From positions 1-64,000 of the IMG/VR virus record IMGVR_UViG_3300017763_000002: a stretch of 64,000 nucleotides of DNA. One strand, given 5' to 3'. Below the pieces are notes generated by a model. It saw nothing but the letters and a program-made list of their open reading frames with translations, had not been told where the DNA came from and ran no database searches. The position numbers and the translations under genes were made by a program. Each line of letters starts with the position of its first letter. Positions within the stretch are counted from its first letter, which is position 1. Shown here piece by piece: positions 13,405 to 47,981 of this stretch.

Positions 13405-13428
13405 TACACATGCAAAATTAATAGTGTA
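13405..13428. promoter_or_regulatory. divergent pair of GTGTA motifs
   Basis: Minus strand GTGTA(13409-13405)-10nt-ATG 13394; plus strand GTGTA(13424-13428)-11nt-ATG 13440. Confidence 0.65.
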
Positions 13429-17069: not shown

Positions 17070-17090
17070 TGTGTAAATCTATATTACACA
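17070..17090. promoter_or_regulatory. overlapping face-to-face GTGTA motifs (palindrome TGTGTAA-N7-TTACACA)
   Basis: Sits in the 31-bp gap between divergent starts 17063(-) and 17095(+). Confidence 0.6.
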
Positions 17091-30700: not shown

Positions 30701-33700
30701 TTTGATTCTGGTGAATCTAGAATAAGAAATGAAACTATCTTTGCAAATACAATAGGAGAGCTATTTAAAAGAAATTGGAAAAATGGAAGAAATGCAGTGG
30801 GCGGCGGGGGCAACAGGGTGGCGGTTTATTGCGGGAAAATTGACGGAATAACTCACGACACATCTTTAAAAAATCATTACAGAGAATCGAGGGGAGACGG
30901 TTTCTTTTTAACTCAAGACTGTTACCTAAAGCCTCATGAAATTAAAAGCTTTTTTAAACAAGGCTCTGTGGTAAATAATTTATTTATAAAAAATATTAAA
31001 TGCTCTGGATATGGTTCGTTATTCCTTGACGCCTCAAATAATATGTATGGAATTGGAAACAATGAAATATCAAAATCAAATCAATCTCAATATACTGGAG
31101 GAGAAAGTATTGGGACTGTTTTTGGTTTAAATTCAGACTTTGATTACGGCCCTGAGTTTATTAAAGAGTCAGTATCTTTTATGCATAAGGCTGGAGATTT
31201 AGTTTCGTATATTTCACATGGATATTCTTACAAAGCTGGAGGTCAAAATTTATATCCCTACTTCGAAAATTATCAAAACGCGGGAGCAGAAGCGATCATG
31301 CTAGATTCTAGTGGGAATCCTATTTCGGCAAAAATGGTTTTCCTAGAAGGCCCTAGGTTTTGGGATAATAGGGACTGGTTTTTAAAAAGAAGTTTGTCTC
31401 AAAAAATAAATAATAATTTTTATTTAAAGGATGAACACTATCGGCCCGTGGACCTAGAAAGATGCACCCCGCACACAAGAAAAGGGCAGTTTACATCTAA
31501 TGTATTTGGATTACCTGTAATTAATGATTTTATACCTGAATGGAAAGACGAAGGGCAGTACCACGAGCTTATAAAAGGGGGTCAAATTATGGGCTCAGAT
31601 AAAAATTATTTACAAAATGACCGAGAAGATGATCCAACTTGGTTTAAATCTGTAGAAACTTACGGAGCTTTGTCTAGCGCTTTTGAATCCAAGCAACCAA
31701 GCCTTGTGACTTATCAAGGCAAAATATATCAATGTATACAAAGACACGGTCACGTATTTGGAGACGAAGCAAGCGACAAAATTCCATACGATAAAAACTT
31801 AAGCAAAAAATTTACTGTTGATTCTGAAGGAGTTTATACCGCAAGAGGCAGAGTCGGGGCGGGAATAATCCCTGGAGAATCGGGATCTGAACTTTATTGG
31901 CAGGAGGTATCTGATTTATCAAATAAAAATATGATTCAATTTTTAACTCAAAGATTAAAAATATTTAACTTAAGTTCAATGATTGTTGTTTCAGAAGATA
32001 ACAGTTTATACATCAAGGGGTTTAATTTTGGTTTATCTAAAGAGGCTGACGGAACTTGTTCTGGTATAAAAGATAACTCTGAATTAATTGCTTTTGAAAG
32101 AGGCGCGGATGTAGGCTCTAATTCTCCGGAGCAAAGACTGATTATAGAAAAATATTTTAAGGATAAGTATTTATATACAGATTTAACTCCGTTCAATACG
32201 TCTATAGATACTAGGCCCACCGTGCCAAAATGGAAAAGTTTTATAAATTTGATGTCTGAAAAAATTGAAGGATGGACGCATCCGAATCCAGTAAATGAAA
32301 CAGGACAATCTACTTTGTCAGGGGGAAGATCTTTGTCCCCTTTTGACTTTTTAGGCAATAATAGAAAAAGAGGTCAGTATTTTGTGGGGATTGATCCCAG
32401 CGAATATATCGATGTAGAAAATTTATCTTTAGAATTAAATCCCACATCTCCAATGCTATCCTGGGGAGAAACAAATTCAGCGCTGAATAATTTATTGTCA
32501 AATAATGTATTCGGGTTTCTCGAAAGTTGGACAGAGATTTTTAGAGCGATGGAAGATTGGAAACAAGGCGTTTCCGCCCACTATAGACAACCAAGACCGT
32601 TTATGTTTGACGGCTCTTTCTCTGAGTGTTTGAATCTTTCCTGGACAACTGTTGACCCATTTGCAAACTCTTTATTTTTAGCATACAGAGGGGCTTATCA
32701 GCCACCTGTAGAAATATCAGGAACCGAGACTGATTGGCTTTATCATCATTCTATAGTATTACCAAGTTCAATTGATTTGTCGACCTTATCAATTAATGTT
32801 AATACCAGGAATAGTATAACAAGTTTGGAACCAAATCAAAGAAACGGCGGATCTATAATGGAAATAAACACAGATTTATCTGACGCGCGTTACAACAGTT
32901 TTTATCCAGAACTTTTAAGATCTCCAAACCCAACATTATTTAATTGGTGGGACTTAATCAGAGACGCTGGGTCAAAAATAAAATACACAGCTTCATTTAA
33001 TACGGACGAAGCAGTAGAAAATCCATCTGCAGAATTTTCATTCATGGAGTTATTTTTCTCTCAACATAGCCCTAGCTCATTTCCCGTAAGTGATTCGGCC
33101 GAATTCTCCGCAAAACCACATATATCTGAGTCGGACAACCCTTGGAACGATAGAAACTCTAGTTCGTTTTACAATCCCTGGGGAAGCTGTAATTTTGTGA
33201 ACAATATATCAAATCAAACCCAGTGGCACATACAAGACGACGCGCCTACTCTTCAATCTTTTTCTGTATGGAATGCCAGGACAAATAGCATTCATACTCC
33301 GACTCTTAGGGCAGATGCAGATTCTCTTCAGAGCATTCTTAATTACAACTACAATCAAAGTTTATACGTTGATTTCTACAGTACTTACCTTAATGCGGCA
33401 AATAATAATAGCACTGATCCTGAGCTACCTAAATTCGTAGAGCTTACCGAAGCTTTCAAGCAGTTACAGTTTTTTGATACCGCGTCGCATTACGCTTTCT
33501 TTGTTAATTCTTATTTGCTAGATCCAGCGTCTTTACCTTTTGGAGGCACAATACCTAAATTTGGATATCAGAATAACAGCGGGTCAATAACATCCGCAGC
33601 ATCGTATAATACTGGAGAAAGAGTGTTCCATAAGGGATTCGCTTTTACGTCTTTAATAGATTCAAATAACTCAACGCCATCTTTTGGTGACGTATATTGC

Positions 33701-36410: not shown

Positions 36411-37151
36411 ATGGATGATGTATTATATGGCGCAGTATGTAATAATGTTGTAGTTATAAAGTATTTGTCTGACGCAGGATTTATTACAAGAGGATTGTTT
36501 TCTAATAATAGAGCCTATATACCAGATAAATTTTTAATTTATAAACCTAACTTTTATTTTGAATGTTATGAATTTTTTAGAAATAAAAAAGTCAGAATTA
36601 AAGATCAGTCTAAGGTACTCTCAGCCTCTTTTGATTCTCCGCAAAATGTTCGCGCTGGGCAAATAATATATGGAGAATGCCAGCCAACAAAAAACTTTAT
36701 AGAAGAAAAAATTAAACAATTTCCAGAACTAAGACTTCCTTTTGAACGTGGAAACATTAAAAATATATCACCTCAGGCTAAAGCTAACGCCCTAGGGTTC
36801 TTTACGGGTTGCGAATTTAAAGAAAAAGATAGGAACTTGAATAAATTTATAGATGATTTAATATGTAGTGAAATTTTTACAAGAGTTCCAATGGAAGAAA
36901 TGTTTGTTGAATTTATATCTAAAGGAGATTCTCCTCAGTCTCAATGGAAAAAAATAATAGATTTATATATAGAGCTCTCTATACAGGAGATTAAGTCTGA
37001 TAAAAAAATGCGTCAATCAGAGAAAGAAAGTTTAGTCTCATCGGTTCGGAGCGCTCGAGACGTAAGAATAGAAAATATGTCTTCTTTGAGTTCTGCTACC
37101 TGGCCAAAGCAATTGATGCCCCGCCCTAATTGGTTTTCTTACGAGATTTAA
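36411..37151 (+). CDS. hypothetical protein, possible fibre assembly chaperone
   Basis: Directly follows the giant gene; C-terminal LSSATWPKQLMPRPNW recalls the WP..P ends of tail-fibre assembly proteins; TATAAT-6nt-ATG. Confidence 0.5.
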   Translation: MDDVLYGAVCNNVVVIKYLSDAGFITRGLFSNNRAYIPDKFLIYKPNFYFECYEFFRNKKVRIKDQSKVLSASFDSPQNVRAGQIIYGECQPTKNFIEEKIKQFPELRLPFERGNIKNISPQAKANALGFFTGCEFKEKDRNLNKFIDDLICSEIFTRVPMEEMFVEFISKGDSPQSQWKKIIDLYIELSIQEIKSDKKMRQSEKESLVSSVRSARDVRIENMSSLSSATWPKQLMPRPNWFSYEI

Positions 37152-37326
37152 TTCTTTTAATTTCTTCAGGCAAAATCCTTTGAACGTCAGAAGCTTTACC
37201 TTCTAACATGCATTCTGCAGGAGTCTGACCGTTTAACAATTTATTCTCTGACTTCAACCAACAGGTTGATTCGTATCCGTTGAGGCTTTTACTTAATGTT
37301 CTAAGTATATTATGGCTATTTTTCAT
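37126..37326 (-). CDS. MbcA/ParS/Xre antitoxin C-terminal domain-like protein (start refined from 37398)
   Basis: CWLKSENKLLNGQTPAECMLEGKASDVQRIL matches W-L-xx-(P)N-xx-L-x-G-x-TP...G...V; GTGTA 15 nt upstream. Confidence 0.7.
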   Translation of the reverse strand: MKNSHNILRTLSKSLNGYESTCWLKSENKLLNGQTPAECMLEGKASDVQRILPEEIKRIKSRKKTN

Positions 37327-37341
37327 ATTATATATTATATA

Positions 37342-37360
37342 TACACTTAATTGACGTGTA
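37342..37360. promoter_or_regulatory. divergent pair of GTGTA motifs
   Basis: Each GTGTA lies 15 nt before its start codon (37326 minus, 37376 plus). Confidence 0.6.
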
Positions 37361-37375
37361 TAATACATTATAGAC

Positions 37376-38098
37376 ATGACCTTAAAAAAGTCCAACAAAG
37401 AGCGGGGTGATTTTGTAATCCCTCAGTTAAAACAAAAAATTGCAGTAAATTCGTTGAAATTAACAGACAAGCAAAAGAAATTTTTGTCTTTAGCGTTTGA
37501 CAGTAAAACAAAAATTATGTTTATCGCTGGCCCCGCTGGTTCAACTAAAACCTATATGGCAGTTTATTCTGCTCTTAGACTACTGAGCGCGTACGACGAA
37601 CTAGACTTGCTTTATGTTCGAACTGTCATTGAAAGTGCAGAAAAAGGATTGGGGGCACTGCCAGGAGATATAGATGAAAAGTTTAATCCTTATATGGCTC
37701 CCTTAGAAGATAAGCTTTATGAAATGTTGCCAAAAACAAATACGGCAAAAAAAGAGATGTTGGATAGCGGAAGAATTTCTGCCATGCCAATAAATTACTT
37801 ACGGGGATCAAGCTGGAAGGATAAAATTGTAGTGGCGGACGAAGCTCAAAATTTTACATATAAAGAGTTAACGACACTAATAACTCGGATCGGAGAAAAC
37901 TGTAAGCTTTTTATCTGTGGAGACTTTATGCAAAGCGATATAAACGGCAAAAGCGGATTCGCTCCAATGTTTGATCTATTTAAAGATCAAGCAAGCAGGG
38001 ACAATGGAATACATTCATTTAAATTCAACAAGGACGATATCCTTCGCAGTGAAATTTTGAAATTTATTATATCTAAACTCGACACAAAAAACGTGTAA
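37376..38098 (+). CDS. phoH: PhoH family ATPase
   Basis: GPAGSTKTYMAV, LGALPGDIDEK, PINYLRG, DEAQN and GDFMQSDI motifs. Confidence 0.95.
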   Translation: MTLKKSNKERGDFVIPQLKQKIAVNSLKLTDKQKKFLSLAFDSKTKIMFIAGPAGSTKTYMAVYSALRLLSAYDELDLLYVRTVIESAEKGLGALPGDIDEKFNPYMAPLEDKLYEMLPKTNTAKKEMLDSGRISAMPINYLRGSSWKDKIVVADEAQNFTYKELTTLITRIGENCKLFICGDFMQSDINGKSGFAPMFDLFKDQASRDNGIHSFKFNKDDILRSEILKFIISKLDTKNV

Positions 38099-38106
38099 TA
38101 TATTTT

Positions 38107-39246
38107 ATGGACGGAAAAATTTATTTACCTAAAATAGAAATTAATGAAACTTTAAACTCGTTAAGTCAAGTTGTAGACTGGGGCCTTAGACAGTCTAACG
38201 TTCCTGAAACATGGAAGGTTACCAGGGGAGAGGGCATTAGCGTTTTAGTGATCGATACAGGCTATCCTGAGCATAAAGACATTGGAGATAACGCTACCCG
38301 TGGCAAAAATTTTATTTCAGGAGAGCCTATAGAAGATGAAAATGGGCATCAAACACACTGCGTGGGAATAATATGCGCAAAAGATAATGGGATTGGAATG
38401 GTTGGCGTTGCTCCAAAAGCTAAGGCCATATGCGTAAAAGCTTTGTCAAAATCTGGATCTGGCAGTTATATTGGTTTGGCTAAAGCTTTGGATTATGCTA
38501 TTGAGGTTAAGCCAGATATTGTGTCGATGAGCTTGGGAGGTTCTGTTGCCAGTCCAATACTTGAATCTAAGATTAAAAAATTATATGAAATGAATATTCC
38601 AGTAATATGCGCTGCAGGAAACACAGGAGAAGGAGGGGTTAATTGGCCAGCCGCTTACGATCAAACTATAGCTGTTGCAGCTCACGATAAGTATGGTAAA
38701 ATAGCAAAATTCTCTTCTCGCGGAAACAAAGTAGAATGGGCTGCGCCAGGAGTAAACATATATAGCTCCTTCTTAGGCAACACCTACGCCAGTTTAAACG
38801 GAACTTCTATGGCATGTCCTTTTATCGCTGGAGTGGTAGCTCTCATGCTGGCTAAACACAAAAAACAAGAAAGAGAAACGGGGAAAAATGACTGTAAGAC
38901 AGTAGCTCAAATTAGAGAACACTTACTTAAGTATACTAAAGATCGAGGCTCTTTAGGAAAGGATAACGACTGGGGTTACGGGGTGATCGACGTAGAAAAA
39001 TTGATCGGGACAGAGCCAGAGCCTACGCCAGAGCCTAAGCCTGAGCCTAAGCCTGAGCCTACGCCAGAGCCTAAGCCTGAGCCTGATACTCCCGAAGAAG
39101 ATGCAGAGCAGTGGAGAAAAGTTTTAATTGGAGTAGGGGTTATATTAATGGCTGTGCTAAGCTTTTTCTCTCTGGGTGAGTGCTCAGAAGAAGAGGTTGA
39201 CTGGGATGATAAATATCAAAAAGAAATAAATGGAGAAAATATGTGA
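38107..39246 (+). CDS. subtilisin-family (S8) serine protease with Pro-rich linker and C-terminal TM helix
   Basis: Catalytic triad motifs VIDTG, NGHQTHCVGII and GTSMACP; PEPK repeats; VLIGVGVILMAVLSFFSL; GTGTA-9nt-ATG. Confidence 0.92.
   Translation: MDGKIYLPKIEINETLNSLSQVVDWGLRQSNVPETWKVTRGEGISVLVIDTGYPEHKDIGDNATRGKNFISGEPIEDENGHQTHCVGIICAKDNGIGMVGVAPKAKAICVKALSKSGSGSYIGLAKALDYAIEVKPDIVSMSLGGSVASPILESKIKKLYEMNIPVICAAGNTGEGGVNWPAAYDQTIAVAAHDKYGKIAKFSSRGNKVEWAAPGVNIYSSFLGNTYASLNGTSMACPFIAGVVALMLAKHKKQERETGKNDCKTVAQIREHLLKYTKDRGSLGKDNDWGYGVIDVEKLIGTEPEPTPEPKPEPKPEPTPEPKPEPDTPEEDAEQWRKVLIGVGVILMAVLSFFSLGECSEEEVDWDDKYQKEINGENM
39013..39085 (+). repeat. coding tandem repeat (EP[T/K]P)n
   Basis: 12-nt units GAGCCTAAGCCT/GAGCCTACGCCA; one 30-nt block repeated at 39019 and 39055. 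Confidence 0.9.
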
Positions 39247-39434
39247 TGGAAGAAAAACAATTTTGGAAAAGCAAAAAATTCTGGGCTGCGTGCATTGCAG
39301 TTATGGTTCCAATGATGAATCATTTTATGAATTGGAATATGGATCATGAAGCCGTAACAACCATGATGACTCCAATGTTGGCTTATGTAGTCGGGCAAGG
39401 CATGGCGGATCTTGGGAAAAACTCTAAAAAATGA
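39243..39434 (+). CDS. small two-TM holin-like protein
   Basis: FWKSKKFWAACIAV...MLAYVVGQGMADLGK matches the KSRKFW...AYI.G.G.AD holin-like pattern. Confidence 0.6.
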   Translation: MMEEKQFWKSKKFWAACIAVMVPMMNHFMNWNMDHEAVTTMMTPMLAYVVGQGMADLGKNSKK

Positions 39435-39868
39435 TGGGCCCAATATTAAATACAATACTTGGCGCGGGAATAAAGATAGGGGCTAACTTGGTAAATGCTT
39501 GGCTTGAGCAAAAAAGACAAGATCAGCTGGCATTAGCCGCAAGAGATCAGGAGACGTTAAGGGCCTTGATAGAGAATCAAAAAGCTCAAGCTTCGGACGG
39601 CTTTGTTCAGGCAACTAGAAGAGTTCTGTTTCTTTCTATTACTTTCACTTTATGCTACCTTATGATTTACTACGCACATAATCCGGAGGTCAGCTATGAT
39701 ATGATTGTGCCTAAGGGAGATAATTCTAGGTGGGGTATATTTTCTTGGTTTCTAGGGGGCACAGACTTTCATGTGGTTACTCTTACTGGAGGGCTTATGC
39801 TTTCTTCTTTTATGGATTTATGCTTTATGGTCGTAGGGTTCTATGCAATACCAAGTAAAAAACGATGA
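39431..39868 (+). CDS. membrane protein, 3TM-holin-like
   Basis: N-terminal amphipathic helix, coiled segment, then two hydrophobic helices ending VVGFY...KKR. Confidence 0.5.
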   Translation: MMGPILNTILGAGIKIGANLVNAWLEQKRQDQLALAARDQETLRALIENQKAQASDGFVQATRRVLFLSITFTLCYLMIYYAHNPEVSYDMIVPKGDNSRWGIFSWFLGGTDFHVVTLTGGLMLSSFMDLCFMVVGFYAIPSKKR

Positions 39869-40131
39869 GGGTTTTATTTATATTAATATTCTTTTTATCT
39901 GGGTGCGTTTCAACTAAAATAAGTACAAAAGATAAAACTGGTCAGACTAACATTTTACAAAATGATTTTAATAGTATTGATGTTGATTCTACAGGCACAA
40001 TAGACAGGGTGGAGTTTTATGAGTCTGTATCAGAAATAAATGCTCAAGAGCCTATTTTCGTATTAATGATAATTATTTTTGCTGTGTTCTTATGCTGCGC
40101 GGTAACTTTTAAATTTTCAAGAAAAAAATAA
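39865..40131 (+). CDS. lipoprotein with EF-hand-like loop and C-terminal TM helix
   Basis: Lipobox FLSG-C; DVDSTGTIDRVE fits the 12-residue EF-hand loop; hydrophobic C-terminus. Confidence 0.65.
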   Translation: MRVLFILIFFLSGCVSTKISTKDKTGQTNILQNDFNSIDVDSTGTIDRVEFYESVSEINAQEPIFVLMIIIFAVFLCCAVTFKFSRKK

Positions 40132-40146
40132 CGTGTACTATAAGTT

Positions 40147-40743
40147 ATGAATGATCCTTTTGCCGTATTAATTGCATCAGCAGTTTCCATTCTGGGAACT
40201 CTAGCCAGCGTTTGGTTAAAAAATAAATTGGAATACAAAAAAGAAAACTGCCTAGAATCTAGGTCGAAGGCGGGCTCAAATGTATACCAAGCTTTAAAAT
40301 TTGTACAATCACAAACAGACTGCGATAGAGCTTATGTTTTTGAATTTCATAACGGAGAACATTTTTTCTCAGGAAAAGGGCAGCAAAAGTTTAGTTGCAC
40401 TTATGAATTTGTTAAACCTGGCGTGAGTAGTGAAGCTTCAAATTCTCAAAACCATCGAGTCTCTAACTTTAGCGTCTTCATGGACAGCATAATTTGTCAA
40501 GAGGTGTTTGACTGCTTGGACACATCTTTGTTGGAAGATCCAGCCTTTCAAAGCATACTTCGCAGTAAAGGTGTGGAGTCTGTTGTGAACGTTCCTTTGA
40601 AAACTTTAAATGGAAATATTATCGGGATTTTAGGTATTGAGTATCTAGATAAAGTTGATGATATCCGAGTTGATAATAAAGAAACAAATTATATAGAATT
40701 TTTAAAACGACAATCAAGGCTAGTCGCTGGATATTTAGCTTAG
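40147..40743 (+). CDS. N-terminal TM plus GAF domain protein
   Basis: TM residues 5-24; DRAYVFEFHNG, TYEFVKPGVS and SVVNVPLKTLNGNIIGILGIEY are GAF-like; GTGTA-9nt-ATG. Confidence 0.7.
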   Translation: MNDPFAVLIASAVSILGTLASVWLKNKLEYKKENCLESRSKAGSNVYQALKFVQSQTDCDRAYVFEFHNGEHFFSGKGQQKFSCTYEFVKPGVSSEASNSQNHRVSNFSVFMDSIICQEVFDCLDTSLLEDPAFQSILRSKGVESVVNVPLKTLNGNIIGILGIEYLDKVDDIRVDNKETNYIEFLKRQSRLVAGYLA

Positions 40744-40772
40744 TTGATATTCTGTAAATATTTATATATAAT
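40744..40772 (+). promoter_or_regulatory. sigma70-type promoter for the Zn-ribbon/sigma-factor operon
   Basis: TTGATA-17nt-TATAAT; ATG 40781 is 8 nt downstream. Confidence 0.8.
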
Positions 40773-40780
40773 ACGTTTGT

Positions 40781-41161
40781 ATGCTATATAATTATTGTAA
40801 ATGCTGCGGCGCTAAAAATTATTACGCTTTATCACCGCCTCAGTTTTGCTCCAACTGCGGGAGCTCATTTGGGGCTAATTCGGTTGCAAGTGAAGCTCAA
40901 GTCAAAAAATCTGAAGTAGCTTCTAAAAAAACAACAAGAGTGCGTAGGAGAAGGTTGCATGATGAACCTGAAGAAGATGGTTTGGATATAGACTCTATTC
41001 CAAAGGTAAGCAAATTAAAATATAATACCTCTCAGGGAGGAATCGGGGGCAGAGTTATGTCCTTGGAATCTCTTTTGCCTGAGCCGGAGAAAGAAAATAT
41101 TGAAAAAACCAAAACAGCAAAACCCAAAAGAAAAAGAGGAAGACCAAGAAAAGAAAAGTAA
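40781..41161 (+). CDS. zinc-ribbon protein with basic tail
   Basis: CKCCG...PQFCSNCG; C-terminal KRKRGRPRK (AT-hook-like GRP). Confidence 0.75.
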   Translation: MLYNYCKCCGAKNYYALSPPQFCSNCGSSFGANSVASEAQVKKSEVASKKTTRVRRRRLHDEPEEDGLDIDSIPKVSKLKYNTSQGGIGGRVMSLESLLPEPEKENIEKTKTAKPKRKRGRPRKEK

Positions 41162-41909
41162 TTACTCTTTTGAGGAACAGTATGAAACAATAAATAAAGA
41201 AGTCAAAAAACGCAGAAATAAATGGTTTTTAGACTCTCTGGCGTGGTTTGATTTTGAAGATGTTGAGCAAATAATAAAAGCTCACATATATAAAAAATGG
41301 GATCAATGGGATCAATCCCGACCTTTGGGGCCGTGGATAAATAAAATTATTACTAACCAGATGAAGAATATCTTGCGTAATAATTATAGTAATTTTGTCA
41401 GACCCTGCTTGAACTGTCCTTTTAATCAATCTAAAACAAGTATGGATCCTGGAATTAGCTCCGGGTCTTTGTGTGGATTCACTAGAACGGGTTTGCAAGA
41501 TTCAGAATGCCCTTTATATGCGAAATGGGAAAAAACTAAAAAATCAGCTTATGATATTAAAATGGCCGTTACAATGGAAAACCATACAGGAGAAGTTTCA
41601 GTAATGGAGAATTCTCAATTAGACATTGATGAAGCGATCAAAAAATTATCAAAAGAAATGAAAAAACATCTTCCTGAAAAACAATACAAAGTATACAAAA
41701 TGCTTTATGTAGAACACAAAAGCGAAGAAGAGGTTGCTAAAATCATGGGGTATAAAACTAGTGAGACGGGGCGCAAGGCTGGATACAAGCAATTAAAAAA
41801 TTTAACGAAAATTTTTAAAGAAAAAGCAGTATCAATCTTAAAGAAAGGAGAAATAATCGCTTATGAAGAAGCTACTTCAGCTTACACAAGAGCAAAAAGA
41901 TCTTATTGA
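41100..41909 (+). CDS. phage sigma70/ECF-like sigma factor with Cys4 insertion
   Basis: Region 2-like EDVEQII..HIYKKWDQWDQSRPLGPWINKIITNQMKNILRN; CLNC...C...C insert; region 4 HTH LPEKQYKVYKMLYVEHKSEEEVAKIMG. Confidence 0.8.
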   Translation: MKKPKQQNPKEKEEDQEKKSNYSFEEQYETINKEVKKRRNKWFLDSLAWFDFEDVEQIIKAHIYKKWDQWDQSRPLGPWINKIITNQMKNILRNNYSNFVRPCLNCPFNQSKTSMDPGISSGSLCGFTRTGLQDSECPLYAKWEKTKKSAYDIKMAVTMENHTGEVSVMENSQLDIDEAIKKLSKEMKKHLPEKQYKVYKMLYVEHKSEEEVAKIMGYKTSETGRKAGYKQLKNLTKIFKEKAVSILKKGEIIAYEEATSAYTRAKRSY

Positions 41910-42921
41910 TTCTAAGGGAATTAACATTACCGATCTCTCAGCTTTAACTCGAGAGGTTTTTGGTGATGAAAAGTTAGACGGAAGAACAAAAGAAGGGCGA
42001 GCGGTAAGAGAATATCTTGCTGAAAAAGAAATCGCATACCAAACAAAACATATAGACAAAAAAGAAGATGTTGAGTTGACTGAAGAGCAAAAGGAATTTA
42101 TAGCTAATAACTGCTCACCCACAATTAGTAGTTTAGAGCTAGCTAAATTAGTTTTTTCTGACGGCTCAATCAAAAATATGAGCAAAGAGTTTTGGGCGGT
42201 ACATGATTATATTAAGAATAATAAGTTAAATATATTCTCCGAAGAAACAGCTTTAAACGTAAAATACACACCACCTAGAGCAGATAGTAAGGTTGTTAAG
42301 AAAATTAATGACTGTGTCGGCGAGGATATTGACTTAGAAAAATTAAATGTACAACAAAAACGATGCATAGAATCATTAAAAAAATTTATGTCGGCGCCTA
42401 GATTTTTACAGGTAATATCTACATACTGCAATCTCGAAGATAGGGATTTGTTTGAAGCTGAATTTGTGCGCGCAAGCTGGGATAAACCCGACTTAACTAC
42501 AGATGAAATTAATTTATATATTAATGTTTGCATGGATTATATTCACCTTAAGAGGATTCAGAGCGCTATGGATAAACTAAATAGAATGTTCGATGAGGCT
42601 CAAGACCAGCAAGACCTCACTGTTAGGCTGGCTGAGTTATTAAAAACAAAAAGCGAAGAATACAATCAATGCGAAAAAAGAATGGAATCTTTAATATCAA
42701 AACTACAAGGAGACCGCTCAAAAAGAATAGCCTCCCAGGTCGAAAAAAACGCCAGCATACTCAACCTGGTTCAATTATTCCAAGAAGAAGAGGAGCGAAA
42801 AATAATGGTAAAAATGGCGGAAATGCAAAAAAAATTAATCGCAGAAGAGGTGGATGTTTTAGAAAAAATGCCAGACTGGAAGTCTAGGGTTTTAGGCATA
42901 TCCAAAAGAGATGTTATTTAA
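41863..42921 (+). CDS. hypothetical helical/coiled-coil protein (possible packaging accessory)
   Basis: ORF track; C-terminal coiled coil; three genes upstream of TerL. Confidence 0.7.
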   Translation: MKKLLQLTQEQKDLIDSKGINITDLSALTREVFGDEKLDGRTKEGRAVREYLAEKEIAYQTKHIDKKEDVELTEEQKEFIANNCSPTISSLELAKLVFSDGSIKNMSKEFWAVHDYIKNNKLNIFSEETALNVKYTPPRADSKVVKKINDCVGEDIDLEKLNVQQKRCIESLKKFMSAPRFLQVISTYCNLEDRDLFEAEFVRASWDKPDLTTDEINLYINVCMDYIHLKRIQSAMDKLNRMFDEAQDQQDLTVRLAELLKTKSEEYNQCEKRMESLISKLQGDRSKRIASQVEKNASILNLVQLFQEEEERKIMVKMAEMQKKLIAEEVDVLEKMPDWKSRVLGISKRDVI

Positions 42922-43589
42922 TGCAAGAAATATTAATAGAAAATCAAAACTTTATTGCGAAAGAAAAGTATCAAGATAAATTCAAAGGCTCTTGTGCGCT
43001 AGGAATATCTTGGAGACCAGGGCAGGAAGAGAAGTCTTATGAAATTAAAAATTGCATTATAGACGGAGCAGGATCTTCAGAGGGCTTAAAGATGTCTTTT
43101 TGTTATAATGTACATGTCGAGTCTTGTAAAATTTATGGAGGCGTAGAGGACTGCGTTGATATTGTAAGAGGCGGAAATATAACTTTCGCGAACTGCTCTT
43201 TTATATCTAACAATACTAAGCAACATATTACCATAAAGGGTGGCGCAAAAAACATTAAAATCATTAACTGTAATTTTATTAAACCTTATAAGAGCAGGTT
43301 CAACGGAGCTTGCATAGACCTTGGAAATTGGACGGACTATGATGATGTAAATAGGCCTCGAGTAAGAAACGTTGAAATTAAAAACTGCAGGATTATAGAC
43401 TCTGAAAGGTCTATTCTTTGTAGGGTTCTTTATTCCGATGATCCTGCTTTAGATTTTTCATTCGGTAAAGTCTTTAAAGTCCCGCGTTTTTTACTAGCTA
43501 TCTTTTGGCTTGGACAAAGACTGGGGGTGCTTGGCAAGCGCAGGAGATTTACAAAAGATCTTTTAGAGATATATGATATAGAGTTATGA
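42921..43589 (+). CDS. right-handed beta-helix (pectin lyase-like) protein
   Basis: Repeated I-x-N/S-C-x-I/F units (IKNCII, VESCKI, FANCSF, IINCNF, IKNCRI) and EDCVDIVRG. Confidence 0.75.
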   Translation: MQEILIENQNFIAKEKYQDKFKGSCALGISWRPGQEEKSYEIKNCIIDGAGSSEGLKMSFCYNVHVESCKIYGGVEDCVDIVRGGNITFANCSFISNNTKQHITIKGGAKNIKIINCNFIKPYKSRFNGACIDLGNWTDYDDVNRPRVRNVEIKNCRIIDSERSILCRVLYSDDPALDFSFGKVFKVPRFLLAIFWLGQRLGVLGKRRRFTKDLLEIYDIEL

Positions 43590-44542
43590 ATTATAATAAA
43601 TGTAAAGTATGCGGAAAAGAATTCGAAAGCAAGCGGGGTTTACACTGCCACCTTAAAGAGCACGGAATTTACGTGGCGGAATATTACACGACATATTATC
43701 CAAAATTAAGCAAGCTTAATCAAACTCCAATACCTTTTAAAAAAGGAATGAATAGGGATGAATATTTTAATCAAGACTTTATAGATAAAAAGGAAATGAA
43801 CCAATGGCTCAGTCAGGGCCAAAAAGACGAGGTAAAAGAATATATTCTTAAGTCATTTAAAAAAAGAATAAAAGAAAAATCTCTCAAAGTTATGCCAAGC
43901 CATGTCGAGGGCTTAATACATAGGCTTCCATCAATAGATTACTGCATTGAACATTTTGGGTCATACTCCGCGTTAGCCGAAATCTTAAACGTTGAGCCTA
44001 TGTTTTCCAAACGATTGCCTAAAGCTTTCTGGGAAAAGGAGCCAGATATTAAAATTTTCATAGACACGAGAGAGCAACAGCCGCTATCCTTTAGTAAACA
44101 AGAAAGTATGAAGCTTGATTTTGGAGATTATACAGCCGCAGGAGAAAACTATTCTTATACTTATGTTGACAGAAAAAGCGCAAACGACTTTATCGGTACT
44201 CTAAGTTTAAAAAGTCTGGATAGATTCAAGAGAGAAATTGAAAGGGCTAGACAAGCAGACTCTTATATTTTTATTGTTATTGAGTCTGATCTAGTAGGAT
44301 TAGAGGCTTACATGCGATCTGCTAAAAGAAATAATTTTGGACCAAGTAAAACAAATCTTAATTTTATATATCACAACATGAGAGAAATATCTCATGAGTT
44401 TAGCGACGTTTGCCAGTTCGTGTTTACTGGTAGCAGGGAAAATTCAGAAAGAATAATAGAAAAAATATTGTACTTTGGCGAGTCTCTTTGGAATGTAGAT
44501 TTACAATATTACTTAGATAACTATGAGCTGGGAAAAAGGTAA
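43586..44542 (+). CDS. C2H2 zinc finger plus ERCC4/XPF-family nuclease
   Basis: CKVCGKEFESKRGLHCHLKEH; IFIDTREQQP, LDFGDY, VDRKSANDF and RFKREIERA motifs. Confidence 0.85.
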   Translation: MNYNKCKVCGKEFESKRGLHCHLKEHGIYVAEYYTTYYPKLSKLNQTPIPFKKGMNRDEYFNQDFIDKKEMNQWLSQGQKDEVKEYILKSFKKRIKEKSLKVMPSHVEGLIHRLPSIDYCIEHFGSYSALAEILNVEPMFSKRLPKAFWEKEPDIKIFIDTREQQPLSFSKQESMKLDFGDYTAAGENYSYTYVDRKSANDFIGTLSLKSLDRFKREIERARQADSYIFIVIESDLVGLEAYMRSAKRNNFGPSKTNLNFIYHNMREISHEFSDVCQFVFTGSRENSERIIEKILYFGESLWNVDLQYYLDNYELGKR

Positions 44543-46391
44543 TCAAAATAATAAAAATATAGAAGATATAAATTCATATATCATGAGTTTAGAAGGTTTT
44601 GTAGACGAACGAGAATCTAAGCTTTTATTGTATAAATTTTTAAGAGAGAATCCGACTTTTACAACAGAATTAATATCAGGTATAAAGTTATTTCCATTTC
44701 AACACATGGCTATTAAGTCGATGTTTAATACAGATTACTTTATGGGGGTGTGGAGTCGGGGTATGTCAAAATCATTCACTACTGGAATTTATGCTTTCCT
44801 GGACGCTATACTTCATCAAGGTGTTGAGATAGGTATATTGTCTAAGTCTTTTCGTCAAGCAAAAATGATATTTAAAAAAATTGAAGATATTGCCGCCAAA
44901 CCAGAAGCTGCATTCTTGGCTCAATGTATAACAAAAAAATCCAAGAGCAATGATGAATGGCTGATGGAGATCGGGCAATCAAGGATTCGAGCCCTACCTC
45001 TTGGTGACGGCGAAAAGCTTCGTGGTTTCAGATTTCATAGAATTATTATCGATGAGTTTTTATTGATGCCTGAAAGAATTTATAATGAGGTTATTGTACC
45101 CTTCTTGTCTGTTGTGGAAAATCCAACCCAACGAGAAGATTTATATAATCTAGAAACTAAGTTAATTGCAGAAGGCAAAATGACAGAAGAAGAAAGATAT
45201 AAATGGCCAAATAATAAATTGATAATGCTATCTTCTGCTAGTTATAAATTCGAATATATGTATAAGCTGTATAGTCAGTTCGAAGGTTTGATCGTTAATC
45301 CAAGCGAAAAACAAGATGATGCAAACAGGGTGATCATGCAATTTAGCTACGACTGCGCTCCTAGGCAACTTTATGATCAGAATCTTATAGATCAAGCTAA
45401 AGCCACTATGAGCCAAAGCCAGTTTGAGCGAGAGTTTGGGGCAATATTTACAGATGATAGTAGTGGGTATTTTAAGACTTCCAGAATGGCAGCATGCTCA
45501 ATTCAGCCTGGAGAAGGTCAGTCTGTGGAAGTAAAAGGAGAAGTGGGAGCCAAATATATATTGGCTTTTGATCCGAGTTGGGCAGAGTCAGAAAGCTCAG
45601 ATGATTTTGCCATGTCTGTTTTTAAAATCGCAGAAAAAACTGGACAAGGGATACTAGTTCACTCTTACGCTATGTCAGGAACTAACTTAAGACATCATAT
45701 GGATTATTTTTATTATTTATTAACTAATTTTAATATTGTATCTATAGTTGGCGATTATAATGGCGGTGTTCAATTCATTAACGCTGTAAATCAAAGCGCA
45801 TTATTCAAGAAAAATAATATAAAAATAGAGACTATAACCTCAGCGTTTGATAAGCCAGAAGACTATAAAAAAGATTTACTAACAGCTAGAAGAGAGTACG
45901 ACAGGAACACTTGGAAGATATGCATACTAAGGAAGCCTACTTCTTCTTGGATTAGAATTGCAAATGAATTACTACAAGCTAATTTCGATCATAAGAGAAT
46001 TTGGTTTGCCTCTAGGGCTACGAATGATGAATATAAGGAACAGACTAAAAAGAAAATACCGATTGAAAAATTAAAATTCTTAAGGACCGTGGAATCGTAC
46101 CATAAGGAATCTAAGACAGCCAAAATGATTGACTTTGTGGAAAATCAATATGATTTAATAGAGTCAACCAAAGGTCAATGTGCTTTAATACAAATTAAAA
46201 CATCTCCTCAAGGAACTCAAACTTTTGATCTCCCGGATAATTTAAAAAGACAAACCGGCCCAGACAAAGCAAGAAAAGATAGTTATTCTGCATTAGTACT
46301 TGGTAATTGGATGATTAAGATACATAATGATATGATGAACGTTAATTTAGATAATGTACAAACCACTTTTACTCCGATGTTTATAGGATAA
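44523..46391 (+). CDS. terL: terminase large subunit
   Basis: Walker A SRGMSKS, Walker B IIIDEF, QFEREFGAIF, and RNase H-like AFDPS...DDFA...DSYSAL motifs. Confidence 0.9.
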   Translation: MSWEKGNQNNKNIEDINSYIMSLEGFVDERESKLLLYKFLRENPTFTTELISGIKLFPFQHMAIKSMFNTDYFMGVWSRGMSKSFTTGIYAFLDAILHQGVEIGILSKSFRQAKMIFKKIEDIAAKPEAAFLAQCITKKSKSNDEWLMEIGQSRIRALPLGDGEKLRGFRFHRIIIDEFLLMPERIYNEVIVPFLSVVENPTQREDLYNLETKLIAEGKMTEEERYKWPNNKLIMLSSASYKFEYMYKLYSQFEGLIVNPSEKQDDANRVIMQFSYDCAPRQLYDQNLIDQAKATMSQSQFEREFGAIFTDDSSGYFKTSRMAACSIQPGEGQSVEVKGEVGAKYILAFDPSWAESESSDDFAMSVFKIAEKTGQGILVHSYAMSGTNLRHHMDYFYYLLTNFNIVSIVGDYNGGVQFINAVNQSALFKKNNIKIETITSAFDKPEDYKKDLLTARREYDRNTWKICILRKPTSSWIRIANELLQANFDHKRIWFASRATNDEYKEQTKKKIPIEKLKFLRTVESYHKESKTAKMIDFVENQYDLIESTKGQCALIQIKTSPQGTQTFDLPDNLKRQTGPDKARKDSYSALVLGNWMIKIHNDMMNVNLDNVQTTFTPMFIG

Positions 46392-46404
46392 ACAATTGTT
46401 TTGT

Positions 46405-46409
46405 GTGTA
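46405..46409 (+). promoter_or_regulatory. GTGTA motif for the head operon
   Basis: GTGTA-15nt-GTG 46425. Confidence 0.6.
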
Positions 46410-46424
46410 CTCTAAAATAGTATT

Positions 46425-47981
46425 GTGAAAAAATATAAATATACCGCAACATTTGCAAGCGAAGTTAAAGCCTCAGAAGAGGCCACAAATTCTATGTTTT
46501 CTGCAGCGTCCCTTGACTCTCTTAAGGATTTAGTTCCTGATGAAATAGATCTAGATAAAAACATTGACTTAATAGGCGTAGCTTTTAACGCTGCTGTTGC
46601 AAATACATTTAACAAAAATGGAGATGGAATAAATACAGAATCTGCTCTTGCTATTTCAGATTACTTTATTCATAAACCTTGCAATGTAGAGCACCAAAAG
46701 AGTAATATTGTAGGACACGTTGTTTCCGCTGGGTTTTCAGAGTACGGACACAACAATCAATTTAAAAAAATAAATGCTGACTATAAAGAACCTTTTAATA
46801 TATGTCTAGGTGCTGTAGTTTATAGAACAGTCGCTCAAGAGTTTTCAGAAATGCTTCTTGATTCATCTGACCCAGATTCTGAAAATTATAATTCAATATC
46901 TGCTAGCTGGGAAGTTGGGTTTAATGATTATAATGTTGCTGTTGGCTCTGGAGAAAACATGCGCATTGTAACCGACAAAGAAGAAATTAAATCCATGGCA
47001 AAAGATCTTAAAGCTTTTGGAGGTGAAGGGGTTAACGATGAAGGCGAACCTGTTAATAGATTAATCGTTGGAGATATTTTTCCTTTGGGAATAGGCTTCA
47101 CAAATAATCCCGCTGCAGATGTTCAGGGTATAACAATAAAAGAAAAAGCAGGTCACAACGAATCAAAAACAACTGAAGGTCAAGGCATTAAAACAAATAA
47201 AACTTCAAAAGAAAAAAGTTCTCATTTAGATAATGAGGCTGTAATACAAGAAGAAGAACAATTTTTCTCTCAAATTATGGAAAAAACAGAAATACTAAAA
47301 GATATCGAACAGCTCCTTTCTGAAAAGGCGGCTGCGAAAGACTTTTCGGATGAAGCCATCGCTAACATTACTAAGGTTTTTCATGACGCTATTCGTGAAA
47401 AGAGCGAAGAGTATGTCAATGAAATCGAAAAAGTGAAGGCAGAGAAATCCGAGGCGCAAAGCGCGAAAGAAGAGTTAACTCAAACACTCTCCGATTTACA
47501 AGAAAAACTAAACGACGCAGAATCAAAACTTGAAGGTCTTGAAGAAGAAAAATCCGAAAGACAAGCTCAAGCTAGATTTAATGCACGCATGAGTTTGCTT
47601 GAAGATTCTTATGAGTTTGATGAAGATGATCGTAAAATCATCGCTACAGAAATTTCTGAGCTAGACGAAACCGAAGAGGCTTTCGCCCAGTATCAAGAAA
47701 AAGTTTCTGTTGTTTTCAAAAACAAAAATAAAGAATTCTTACAAAAATTGGCAGATGAAATGGAAGCTAAAATTCAGGAAGAAGTAGAAAAACGTCTATC
47801 TGATACTGCTGAAGCAAGTGCAACCGAGACTACGGAAGAAGTAGAATCCACAGATCTTGGTGAAACTGTTGAAGAAGAAGCTACAATTTCTAACAACAAT
47901 GGAGAAACTATTGAAACCGAACAGAGTCTTAAGGAGCGTTTTGAACAAGCGTTTAAGGATTCTGTAAAAGTTAACTACTAA
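46425..47981 (+). CDS. prohead protease with C-terminal coiled-coil scaffold
   Basis: N-domain with KPCNVEH, IVGHV, SASWEVGF and GIGFTNNPAADV (HK97-type protease-like); acidic coiled-coil C-half; directly upstream of the capsid genes. Confidence 0.75.
   Translation: MKKYKYTATFASEVKASEEATNSMFSAASLDSLKDLVPDEIDLDKNIDLIGVAFNAAVANTFNKNGDGINTESALAISDYFIHKPCNVEHQKSNIVGHVVSAGFSEYGHNNQFKKINADYKEPFNICLGAVVYRTVAQEFSEMLLDSSDPDSENYNSISASWEVGFNDYNVAVGSGENMRIVTDKEEIKSMAKDLKAFGGEGVNDEGEPVNRLIVGDIFPLGIGFTNNPAADVQGITIKEKAGHNESKTTEGQGIKTNKTSKEKSSHLDNEAVIQEEEQFFSQIMEKTEILKDIEQLLSEKAAAKDFSDEAIANITKVFHDAIREKSEEYVNEIEKVKAEKSEAQSAKEELTQTLSDLQEKLNDAESKLEGLEEEKSERQAQARFNARMSLLEDSYEFDEDDRKIIATEISELDETEEAFAQYQEKVSVVFKNKNKEFLQKLADEMEAKIQEEVEKRLSDTAEASATETTEEVESTDLGETVEEEATISNNNGETIETEQSLKERFEQAFKDSVKVNY

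What the first reader, a model, noticed from the sequence alone, without database searches (positions are those of the whole stretch)
40744..41909. Phage sigma factor with an internal Cys4 module, paired with a Zn-ribbon/AT-hook protein
Seen in sequence: ECF-like regions 2 and 4 separated by CLNC-x21-C-x11-C. It lies in a sigma70-promoted operon behind a CxxC/CxxC protein ending KRGRPRK. This gives a visible cascade: host-sigma promoter, phage sigma, GTGTA genes. Inference: a zinc- or redox-gated late sigma factor with a co-activator or anti-sigma partner (functionally like T4 gp55/gp33). A metal module inside the sigma linker is unusual.
Basis: partly seen in the sequence, partly recalled or inferred. 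Interest (0 to 1): 0.6.

Follow-up and report, generated by a model that had tools for sequence, protein, structure and literature searches.

The report
Phage sigma factor with built-in Cys4 module
An uncultured 205-kb marine phage encodes a sigma factor with four invariant cysteines inserted between its two DNA-reading domains. It is always paired with a small zinc-ribbon protein and most likely switches host RNA polymerase to the phage's late GTGTA promoters. This is a large, uncharacterised variant of a known kind of regulator.

Summary
Window 41100-41909 encodes a 269-aa sigma-70/ECF-like protein. Upstream, overlapping by 62 nt, lies a 126-aa protein with an N-terminal CxxC-x13-CxxC ribbon and a C-terminal RGRPRK AT-hook. 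Both sit behind TTGATA-N17-TATAAT.

The four cysteines are invariant in 161 diverse relatives. The family is large: 938 protein clusters, over 574 viral contigs and 498 clusters at 50% identity. No cultured phage, Pfam family or solved fold matches the module. The ribbon-protein/sigma pair is kept even in distant branches, but the AT-hook occurs in only 27 of 61.

GTGTA lies 12-40 nt before 26 start codons (27 sites; 1.7 expected), mostly tail and virion genes, with no -35 element. Sigma-70-type promoters sit before small early genes. The genome has one sigma gene and no detectable RNA polymerase.

Best reading: an early-expressed phage sigma, with a structural metal module in place of sigma-3, redirects host polymerase to -10-only late promoters. 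Nothing here supports zinc or redox gating, and the complex prediction gave no verdict. The closest analogue is phiEco32 gp36/gp79. I rate it a new variant of a known kind.

The parts
40744..40772 (+). Sigma-70-type promoter TTGATA-N17-TATAAT. The -10 hexamer ends 8 nt before the ATG of the zinc-ribbon gene, so the leader is absent or very short.
   Evidence: Best hit (11 of 12) of the consensus scan over 37000-47000. TTGAYA/TTGATT-N16-18-TATAAT is kept at this place in most related loci, including the distant L099.
40781..41161 (+). ZnR126, a 126-aa partner protein with an N-terminal zinc ribbon, an acidic middle motif (DGxDIxxVPxIxKLxY) and a basic tail.
   Evidence: ORF list. 25-sequence alignment A2: C6, C9, C23 and C26 invariant. 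Ribbon in 61 of 61 and middle motif in 59 of 61 unique homologues. No PHROG or NCBIfam hit; Pfam FYDLN_acid only at E 0.0019, below cut-off.
40796..40858 (+). Codons of the zinc ribbon C6-x2-C9-x13-C23-x2-C26 of ZnR126.
   Evidence: Read directly from the sequence; invariant in A2 and in distant loci L097-L101.
41126..41158 (+). AT-hook tail KRKRGRPRKEK of ZnR126. The same DNA also encodes the N-terminus of sigma in the +1 frame.
   Evidence: Sequence. A GRP-type hook occurs in only 27 of 61 unique homologues; the others carry a different C-terminal ExxxxxxC(K/R)S tail.
41100..41909 (+). Sigma factor gene, 269 aa. The TTG start is the only canonical start in frame, with GGAG at 41085-41088. 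It overlaps ZnR126 by 62 nt.
   Evidence: Family scans. Foldseek top hits are all sigma factors, led by SigH 6koo_F at E 2.4e-3. 938 homologous clusters.
41247..41384 (+). Sigma region 2 (residues 50-95), with the core-binding and -10-reading helices DFEDVEQ...PWINKIITNQMKNILRN.
   Evidence: Pfam Sigma70_r2 over 50-95. Profile alignment to SigR sigma-2, PDB 1h3l. AF2 pLDDT 85-91.
41406..41510 (+). Cys4 module C103-x2-C106-x18-C125-x11-C137, followed by the invariant W143 helix.
   Evidence: Codons checked. 100% conserved in 161 sequences. Domain model pLDDT 83-90 at the core. No Pfam, PDB-sequence or PDB-fold match.
41625..41849 (+). Sigma region 4 (residues about 176-250), a helix-turn-helix containing GRKAGYKQLKNL.
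   Evidence: Pfam Sigma70_r4_2 over 188-217. PHROG 3512 over 171-238. AF2 helices 176-249 with pLDDT 80-90.
41863..42921 (+). orf352, a conserved downstream gene that overlaps the sigma 3' end by 47 nt and has its own AAGGAG. Helix-rich, function unknown; possibly a small terminase or other DNA-binding protein (inference).
   Evidence: Present in 78 of 80 related loci. No family hit.
40133..40137 (+). GTGTA element 14 nt before the ATG of the GAF-domain gene (40147-40743) that precedes the operon.
   Evidence: GTGTA is kept at -14 to -17 in about half of 51 distinct orthologous upstream regions while the flanking sequence diverges.
17071..17089 (.). Example of back-to-back GTGTA elements, one on each strand, in the 31-nt gap between divergent genes. 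They lie 24 and 26 nt from the respective start codons.
   Evidence: Similar pairs occur at 13405/13424 and 37342/37356.
46405..46409 (+). GTGTA 20 nt before the start of the 518-aa gene that follows the large terminase. It has the position of a portal gene, but no family hit.
   Evidence: The same arrangement is seen in the distant locus L099.

Best explanation
The 269-aa protein is a phage-encoded sigma-70-family factor of ECF-like build: sigma-2 plus sigma-4, with no sigma-1.1 or sigma-3.

**The Cys4 module.** The sigma-2/sigma-4 connector is enlarged to about 80 residues. It holds an invariant four-cysteine module, most likely a structural Zn(II) site. From the predicted order of elements (CxxC knuckle, short beta-bridge, helix), the fold may be treble-clef-like. 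After it come an invariant Trp helix and an acidic ENHxxE stretch. The module sits where sigma-3 and the region 3.0 helix sit in larger sigmas.

**Expression.** The gene is expressed early from a host-type promoter (TTGATA-N17-TATAAT). It shares an operon with, and is translationally coupled to, a small zinc-ribbon protein.

**Action.** The phage has no detectable RNA polymerase of its own and only this one sigma. The sigma therefore most likely loads onto host core polymerase and directs it to the GTGTA elements. These lie 14-16 nt before start codons (leaderless or nearly so) or 20-27 nt before them (with an AAGG ribosome site). They precede tail, tape-measure, fibre, virion and other late genes, and have no -35 element.

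**The partner.** The zinc-ribbon protein is an obligatory cofactor of unknown sign. The most economical model is a phiEco32 gp79-like helper that stabilises the phage holoenzyme and/or displaces host sigma.

**Shown:** domain architecture, conservation, synteny, and motif statistics and positions.
**Inferred:** metal binding, polymerase binding, assignment of GTGTA to this sigma, and the partner's role.
For: - **Sigma identity.** Family scans, the profile alignment to SigR sigma-2, and Foldseek top hits that are all sigma factors.
- **Cys4 invariance.** Seen in alignments of 26, 129 and 161 sequences, with loop lengths varying from x8 to x19. With a deep alignment, the module core is predicted at pLDDT 83-90.
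- **A separate family.** 498 representatives at E<=1e-3 among 1.84 billion proteins, so cellular ECF sigmas are not reached.
- **Synteny.** GAF-ZnR-sigma-orf352-ERCC4-TerL is kept in about 76 of 80 loci. The ZnR stop overlaps the sigma start in nearly all of them. The pair is also kept in distant loci L097-L101.
- **Promoter before ZnR.** It is conserved.
- **GTGTA enrichment.** It is the top enriched 5-mer upstream of genes, 29 against 5.9 expected. 27 sites fall 12-40 nt upstream against 1.68 expected, Poisson P 2e-23.
- **GTGTA avoided elsewhere.** It is under-represented in the window, 36 against 64.8 in shuffles.
- **Orientation.** Divergent gene pairs carry back-to-back copies.
- **No -35.** No -35 signal is present.
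- **Downstream genes.** They include the tape measure, central fibre, tail fibres and an internal virion protein.
- **Early class.** 47 sigma-70-type promoters lie mostly before small ORFs at the genome ends. The -10 ends exactly 6 nt before the ATG in 15 of them.
- **Polymerase and sigma count.** One sigma gene, and no beta or beta' Pfam hit in the 204.9-kb genome. The T7-RNAP Pfam search also found nothing, but its controls did not ring, so that result is uninformative.
- **Precedent.** phiEco32 gp36 reads AATGTA centred at -11.5 with helper gp79 (PMC12276001).
- **RNA libraries.** Marine RNA libraries hold exact short contigs over the ZnR-sigma junction. This shows presence only.
Against: - No experiment or structure links this sigma to GTGTA, to polymerase or to a metal.
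- All curated family cut-offs are narrowly missed.
- The complex prediction for sigma and ZnR scored 0.00, which counts as no verdict.
- The module has no recognisable fold match, so 'zinc site' rests on the cysteine pattern alone. A 4-Cys site could also hold an Fe-S cluster.
- ECF sigmas normally need a -35 element, and this sigma keeps sigma-4, yet no -35 motif is seen.
- Very divergent phage polymerases would escape the Pfam searches.
- The host is unknown.
Confidence: 0.6

Rival explanations
1. The Cys4 module is a regulatory switch. Zinc occupancy or thiol oxidation would gate sigma activity, as in CorE/CorE2 (metal-gated ECF238) or SigK (disulfide).
For: Metal- or redox-controlled cysteines are known in ECF sigmas (PMC7826278). 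The four cysteines are invariant.
Against: Invariance, a compact confident fold and free variation of loop length are typical of structural sites. Known gated sigmas carry their cysteines in a C-terminal extension, not inside the connector. No sensor logic is evident for a lytic late switch. Nothing here tests gating.
Confidence: 0.12
2. The four cysteines bind an Fe-S cluster, making a WhiB-like redox or NO sensor built into the sigma, rather than zinc.
For: Four-Cys motifs that include a CxxC can ligate [4Fe-4S]. WhiB-type Fe-S proteins work on sigma factors (established knowledge).
Against: The spacing does not match the WhiB pattern. There is no family hit. The only weak sequence echo is the C4 zinc finger of RecR, at E 0.23 and not significant. 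Iron is scarce in the open ocean (general knowledge).
Confidence: 0.08
3. ZnR126 is an anti-sigma factor, like the small Zn-binding CsfB/Gin of Bacillus. It would hold the phage sigma inactive until late times, rather than acting as a helper.
For: ECF sigmas are typically co-transcribed with their anti-sigma. The protein is small, has two CxxC pairs and is translationally coupled to sigma.
Against: It lies upstream of sigma, not downstream. It lacks the ZAS HxxxCxxC motif. There is no family hit. A basic or AT-hook tail in many members suggests DNA contact. The complex prediction gave no verdict.
Confidence: 0.2
4. GTGTA is not read by this sigma. It could be a site for another phage factor working with host sigma-70 holoenzyme, an RNA-processing site or a translation signal, and the sigma could have a different, unseen promoter set.
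For: The link is purely correlative. No -35 element accompanies GTGTA, although the sigma has a sigma-4 domain.
Against: GTGTA sits at two distance classes: 14-16 nt from the ATG, or 20-27 nt with an AAGG between. This argues against a ribosome signal. It occupies the same place as the -10 of the sigma-70-type promoters. It recurs before structural genes in a distant sigma-bearing phage. TGTA-type -10-like elements are read by phage sigma gp36. No other enriched motif was found.
Confidence: 0.15

Closest known systems
phiEco32 gp36 (phage sigma) with gp79 (helper that displaces sigma-70), PMC12276001
   Same: A phage sigma with sigma-2-like and sigma-4-like domains, made early from host promoters. 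Middle and late promoters are defined mainly by a short -10-like element containing TGTA (AATGTA centred at -11.5, against GTGTA here). A second small phage protein works with it.
   Different: No detectable sequence similarity: the profile search of PDB sequences returned only SigR sigma-2. gp36 has no cysteine module and does contact a -35 region. gp79 is not a zinc-ribbon protein and is not described as adjacent to gp36. The host and phage type also differ.
T4 gp55 / gp33 late transcription system
   Same: A -10-only late promoter with no -35, and phage proteins that retarget host polymerase to late genes.
   Different: gp55 is a minimal sigma-2-only protein and gp33 replaces sigma-4 on the flap. 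Here sigma-4 is present in the same chain. There is no Pfam or PHROG match to gp55 or gp33. A clamp dependence was not examined.
ECF238 sigmas (CorE, CorE2, SigZ) and other cysteine-bearing ECFs (PMC7826278)
   Same: ECF-type sigmas in which conserved cysteines bind metal, so the idea of a metal site within a sigma has precedent.
   Different: Their cysteines lie in a C-terminal extension of about 20 aa (occasionally with one in the linker) and act as a metal-sensing switch. [quoted passage not shown] The ECF classification explicitly did not capture phage sigmas.
Cellular ECF (group 4) sigma factors such as SigH, SigE and SigW
   Same: The sigma-2 and sigma-4 folds; a region 2 motif of the D-x-E-D-x-x-Q ... 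W-x-x-x-I-x-x-N-x-x-x-N-x-x-R type; no sigma-1.1 or sigma-3.
   Different: The connector is about 80 aa instead of about 20-40 and holds the Cys4 domain. Curated cut-offs are narrowly missed. No -35 motif is seen at the candidate promoters. No downstream anti-sigma is present.

Membership tests
Sigma-70 family, ECF-like (group 4) | Sigma-2 domain (regions 2.1-2.4) recognisable by sequence and fold | tested here: met
   Pfam Sigma70_r2 over residues 50-95, E 7e-5, 23.0 bits against a 24 cut-off. Aligned to SigR sigma-2, 1h3l. AF2 pLDDT 85-91 and Foldseek top hits SigH, SigE and SigL.
Sigma-70 family, ECF-like (group 4) | Sigma-4 helix-turn-helix domain | tested here: met
   Pfam Sigma70_r4_2 over 188-217, E 1.4e-4. 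PHROG 3512 over 171-238. TIGR02937 spans residues 24-221. Confident helices at 176-249.
Sigma-70 family, ECF-like (group 4) | Score above the curated family cut-offs | tested here: not met
   TIGR02937 41.2 against 42.9 bits; r2 23.0 against 24; r4_2 21.9 against 25.7. All are near misses, plausibly caused by the insertion.
Sigma-70 family, ECF-like (group 4) | [quoted passage not shown] | tested here: not met
   About 80 residues lie between R93 and the first sigma-4 helix, and they include a confidently folded Cys4 module. No Sigma70_r3 hit.
Sigma-70 family, ECF-like (group 4) | Binds core RNA polymerase and confers promoter-specific initiation | not testable with these tools
   Only indirect evidence: a single sigma gene, no beta or beta' subunit gene found, and an enriched GTGTA motif. 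The T7-type polymerase search was uninformative because its controls did not ring.
ECF238 / CorE-type metal-gated sigma | Cysteine-rich C-terminal extension after sigma-4 | tested here: not met
   The C-terminus (residues 250-269) has no cysteine. All four conserved cysteines are internal, at 103-137.
ZAS-type anti-sigma factor (for ZnR126) | HxxxCxxC zinc-binding anti-sigma domain | tested here: not met
   The N-terminus reads MLYNYCKCCG...FCSNCG with no His three residues before a CxxC. No anti-sigma family hit.
AT-hook DNA-binding motif (for ZnR126) | R-G-R-P core flanked by Lys/Arg, conserved among orthologues | tested here: inconclusive
   A canonical KRKRGRPRK is present in the window protein, but a GRP-type hook is kept in only 27 of 61 unique homologues.
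T4 gp55 / gp33 late system | Homology to gp55 or gp33 | tested here: not met
   No PHROG or Pfam match to these families for either protein. The only resemblance is the -10-only promoter.
phiEco32 gp36 family | Sequence similarity to gp36 | tested here: not met
   tblastn of two family members against 50,697 phage records found nothing. The PDB profile search gave only SigR.

The most novel reading that the evidence does not exclude
This would be a new architectural class of bacterial-type sigma factor. An intrinsic zinc domain takes the place of sigma-3 and region 3.0 and reads the GTG of an extended -10-like GTGTA element. That would give -35-independent and largely leaderless late transcription. 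A dedicated zinc-ribbon cofactor, sometimes with an AT-hook, would help evict host sigma-70 or anchor the complex on AT-rich upstream DNA. The system would be used by a very abundant, uncultured group of marine phages.
Probability: 0.25. Interest if true: 0.8.

Novelty: new variant of a known kind. Interest (0 to 1): 0.62.

Why it matters
Phage sigma factors are a classic route for taking over host transcription, but very few have been characterised: T4 gp55, SPO1 gp28/gp33-34 and phiEco32 gp36.

This family is large, marine and entirely uncultured. It adds a folded, presumably metal-binding domain inside the sigma-2/sigma-4 connector. That segment threads through the polymerase active-site cleft and RNA exit channel in ECF holoenzymes. 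The ECF classification consulted here (PMC7826278) describes no such internal domain, and it did not cover phage sigmas.

The family comes with a fixed partner protein and a very short, position-locked promoter element. Together these form a compact system that can be tested directly for how a sigma initiates without a -35 contact. The element could also become a small orthogonal promoter/sigma pair for synthetic biology.

The GTGTA motif also gives a practical way to annotate late genes and leaderless starts in these abundant ocean phages.

Tried and rejected
- **Sigma-ZnR126 binding.** The complex prediction scored 0.00 in both runs, so the tool gives no verdict for or against binding.
- **ZnR-sigma fusion.** I considered a fusion made by frameshift or a sequencing error in the A-rich overlap. 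I rejected it because homologues have their own ATG or TTG starts and are 225-280 aa long. Overlaps of 1-23 nt with the same relative frame look like ordinary start/stop coupling. None of the longer family members carries an N-terminal ribbon.
- **Cultured relatives.** Protein and DNA searches of 50,697 phage records found nothing for the sigma (two members) or the 7.9-kb region. The terminase matches only at 24-27% identity.
- **Fold of the Cys module.** Foldseek against PDB gave no hit. The exhaustive VIA-align search gave a best Z of 2.1, which is noise. Pfam and PDB-sequence profile searches gave nothing significant.
- **-35 element upstream of GTGTA.** No position exceeds about 0.5 bit.
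- **Host.** Only six MAG contigs from unrelated phyla carry the gene, probably mis-binned phage DNA.
- **Phage RNA polymerase.** There is no Pfam beta or beta' match in the genome. The T7-type search returned nothing, but its controls did not ring, so it is uninformative. The 5,895-aa ORF shows only CBM_5_12 and RCC1 repeats.
- **Word search with the module alone.** It found only the same family.
- **Atlas look-up for ZnR126.** It returned only viral hypothetical clusters with generic zinc-ribbon labels.
- **Whether this is a 'moraphage' (PMC12619734).** I could not decide.
Full report
**Context**

The window is the first 64 kb of a 204,906-bp IMG/VR virus record that CheckV rates complete. 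Its relatives come from Tara, JGI and other marine metagenomes. There is no close cultured relative. The sigma, a second family member and a 7.9-kb stretch find nothing among 50,697 phage records, and the large terminase matches only at 24-27% identity.

The local gene order, all on the + strand, is:
- PhoH-like
- subtilase
- three small membrane-like ORFs
- GAF-domain protein (40147-40743)
- ZnR126 (40781-41161)
- sigma (41100-41909)
- orf352 (41863-42921)
- beta-helix protein
- ERCC4 nuclease
- large terminase (44523-46391)

**Checking the observation**

The sequence shows TTGATA-N17-TATAAT at 40744-40772, with the -10 ending 8 nt before the ATG at 40781. It is the best sigma-70-type match (11 of 12) in a 10-kb scan.

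ZnR126 begins MLYNYCKCCG...FCSNCG, giving C6-x2-C9-x13-C23-x2-C26, and ends KRKRGRPRKEK.

The sigma frame has a single canonical start, TTG at 41100, with GGAG 11 nt upstream. It therefore overlaps ZnR126 by 62 nt in the +1 frame. The DNA that encodes the AT-hook also encodes the sigma N-terminus.

The cysteines are at 103, 106, 125 and 137; I checked the codons at 41406, 41415, 41472 and 41508. The spacing is x2, x18, x11.

**Is it a sigma factor?**

- Pfam gives Sigma70_r2 (residues 50-95, 23.0 bits, cut-off 24) and Sigma70_r4_2 (188-217, 21.9 bits, cut-off 25.7).
- PHROG 1740 'RNA polymerase sigma factor' scores 2.7e-7.
- TIGR02937 spans residues 24-221 at 41.2 bits against a 42.9 cut-off, E 1e-10.
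- A family profile aligns region 2 to SigR sigma-2, 1h3l.
- The AlphaFold model is confident for residues 20-100 and 175-250.
- Its Foldseek matches are almost all sigma factors, led by ECF SigH, SigE, SigL and SigW. The E-values are weak (from 2.4e-3) because the two domains float relative to each other.

No sigma-3 or sigma-1.1 match is seen. I accept 'sigma-70 family, ECF-like', noting that every curated cut-off is narrowly missed.

**The Cys4 module**

The word-indexed search found 938 clusters. IMG/VR holds more than 574 loci. The exhaustive profile search of 1.84 billion representatives found 498 at E<=1e-3 and 216 at E<=1e-30, nearly all 220-250 aa long. I ran that search because the novelty claim rests on the absence of other relatives. 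Millions of cellular ECF sigmas do not reach E 1e-3, so the family is well separated from them.

- In 129 close full-length members, all four cysteines are present.
- In 161 diverse members, C103, C106, C125, C137 and W143 are 100% conserved, P102 97% and K147 92%. The first loop varies from 8 to 19 residues and the second from 8 to 13.
- Some branches space the first pair wider or add a fifth cysteine, giving C-x2-C just before the helix.
- Only one full-length representative (P0192) lacks the module.

Folded alone with a 149-sequence alignment, the region is predicted with pLDDT 83-90 at its core. The order of elements is a CxxC turn, a small beta-bridge, then helices starting right after the last cysteine. 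That order resembles a treble-clef zinc finger, but this is my inference because no coordinates are returned.

No known family or fold matches the module:
- Foldseek against PDB gave nothing.
- The exhaustive VIA search gave a best Z of 2.1.
- Pfam gave nothing.
- The PDB-sequence profile search gave only the RecR C4 finger, at a non-significant E of 0.23.

The module starts about ten residues after the region 2.4 helix, which is where region 3.0 and sigma-3 begin in larger sigmas. It is followed by a conserved acidic ENHxxE stretch that could be the counterpart of the sigma finger (inference).

Invariant ligands with freely varying loops point to a structural metal site. Nothing in the data speaks for gating.

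**The partner**

The order GAF-ZnR-sigma-orf352-ERCC4-TerL is kept in most of 80 loci. ZnR is present in 76, orf352 in 78 and GAF in 67. The ZnR stop overlaps the sigma start by 1 to 62+ nt in nearly all of them.

The N-terminal ribbon is invariant (61 of 61 unique sequences). An acidic and hydrophobic motif, DGxDIxxVPxIxKLxY, is present in 59 of 61. The AT-hook occurs in only 27 of 61; the rest have another basic tail or a distinct ExxxxxxC(K/R)S tail.

In distant branches (loci L097-L101, with sigmas below about 40% identity), the ORF directly upstream of the sigma gene is again an N-terminal CxxC...CxxC protein. The pairing is therefore ancient and probably functional.

What ZnR126 does is open:
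- It has no family assignment.
- It lacks the ZAS motif.
- The complex prediction gave no verdict.

**Promoters and the proposed cascade**

I called 222 genes in the whole genome.

*GTGTA class*
- GTGTA is the most enriched 5-mer in the 100 nt upstream of genes, 29 against 5.9 expected.
- 27 sites lie 12-40 nt before a start codon against 1.68 expected from the genome-wide density, P 2e-23.
- The motif is avoided elsewhere: 36 in the window against 64.8 in shuffles, and every shuffle had at least 36.
- Distances fall in two classes. At 14-16 nt there is no ribosome site. At 20-27 nt there is an AAGG between motif and ATG. That pattern fits a promoter element and argues against a translation signal.
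- Divergent gene pairs carry one copy on each strand within intergenic gaps of 31-45 nt.
- No -35 signal accompanies it.
- The genes behind it include the tape measure, a central-fibre J-like protein, three tail-fibre proteins, and an internal virion protein followed by a 5,895-aa ORF. They also include the gene after the terminase, PhoH, the subtilase and the GAF gene.

*Sigma-70-type class*
- 47 promoters of the form TTGACA-N16-18-TAnnnT lie mainly before small ORFs at 0-7 kb and 163-204 kb.
- The -10 ends exactly 6 nt before the ATG in 15 cases, which implies leaderless early mRNAs.
- The ZnR-sigma operon belongs to this class, and its promoter is conserved across related and distant loci.

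*Conservation of GTGTA*
- Upstream of the GAF orthologues, GTGTA and its spacing are kept in about half of 51 distinct sequences while the flanks diverge.
- In the distant locus L099, GTGTA stands 27 nt before two structural genes downstream of the terminase.

*Polymerase and sigma count*
- The genome has one sigma gene and no beta or beta' Pfam match.
- The T7-type Pfam search also found nothing, but none of its control genomes rang, so that result says nothing either way.

*RNA libraries*
- Three marine RNA libraries contain exact short contigs over 40878-41200, 41208-41403 and 41828-41999.
- This shows presence in RNA libraries, not proven transcription.

Taken together, the order 'host promoter, then phage sigma, then GTGTA late genes' is the simplest reading. 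The sigma-GTGTA link remains correlative.

**Comparison with known systems**

- **phiEco32 gp36/gp79** is the closest functional analogue. The sigma is made from host promoters. Middle and late promoters are defined by AATGTA centred at -11.5. Helper gp79 displaces sigma-70 and stabilises gp36 (PMC12276001). There is no sequence similarity, gp36 has no cysteine module, and it does use a -35 contact.
- **T4 gp55/gp33** shares only the -10-only late promoter.
- **ECF238 (CorE/CorE2)** sigmas, which sense metal, carry their cysteines in a C-terminal extension, sometimes with one in the linker. The ECF re-classification states that phage sigmas were not captured (PMC7826278).
- **A survey of jumbo phages** describes two types of phage sigma, minimal and RpoD-like, and neither has an internal zinc module (PMC7824862).

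I therefore rate this a new variant of a known kind: a phage ECF-like sigma with an internal, invariant Cys4 domain and an obligatory zinc-ribbon partner.

**Verdict**

- Observation: confirmed, with one spacing correction.
- Interpretation: partly supported. The sigma, the partner and the cascade are supported. Zinc or redox gating and a universal AT-hook are not.
- Best explanation: confidence about 0.6.
- Interest: 0.62.

No genetic code other than table 11 was used.

Noticed in passing
window 18704-36391 (+): A single 5,895-aa ORF follows a small 'internal virion protein' gene (18190-18726) that has a GTGTA element. Pfam finds only CBM_5_12 and RCC1 repeats, so almost all of it is unassigned.
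   Followed up: partly
whole genome; e.g. window 2969, 3409, 4170 (+) and 4813, 5312, 5841 (-): In 15 sigma-70-type promoters the -10 hexamer ends exactly 6 nt before the ATG, so many early genes appear to be leaderless. The GTGTA class at 14 nt looks leaderless too.
   Followed up: partly
window 13405/13424, 17071/17085, 37342/37356: Divergent gene pairs share very short intergenic gaps that hold two GTGTA copies, one per strand and 9-14 nt apart.
   Followed up: yes
window 41100-41161: A 62-nt dual-coding stretch: the AT-hook tail of ZnR126 and the lysine-rich N-terminus of sigma are read from the same A-rich DNA in two frames.
   Followed up: yes
window 40147-40743 (+): A GAF-domain protein with a hydrophobic N-terminal helix lies directly upstream of the operon. 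It has its own GTGTA element, is kept in 67 of 80 loci, and no terminator-like site follows it. It may be part of the regulatory module, and its transcript may read through into ZnR-sigma.
   Followed up: partly
window 38107-39246 (+): A subtilase with a C-terminal PEPK/PEPT repeat and a hydrophobic tail, behind a GTGTA element.
   Followed up: no
window 43586-44542 (+): An ERCC4-type nuclease with an N-terminal C2H2-like zinc finger lies between the sigma module and the large terminase. It is kept in 72 of 80 loci.
   Followed up: no
protein P0192 (200 aa): This is the only full-length family representative with no cysteines; the module is neatly deleted. It could serve as a natural control for what the module does.
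   Followed up: no
L099:114-737: A distant relative's contig carries a second, ordinary sigma-like gene (207 aa, Sigma70_r4) about 9 kb upstream of the Cys4 sigma. The window's genome has only one sigma.
   Followed up: no
window, both strands: GTGTA is under-represented overall: 36 found against a mean of 64.8 in 100 dinucleotide shuffles, none of which had fewer. This suggests selection against stray copies.
   Followed up: yes
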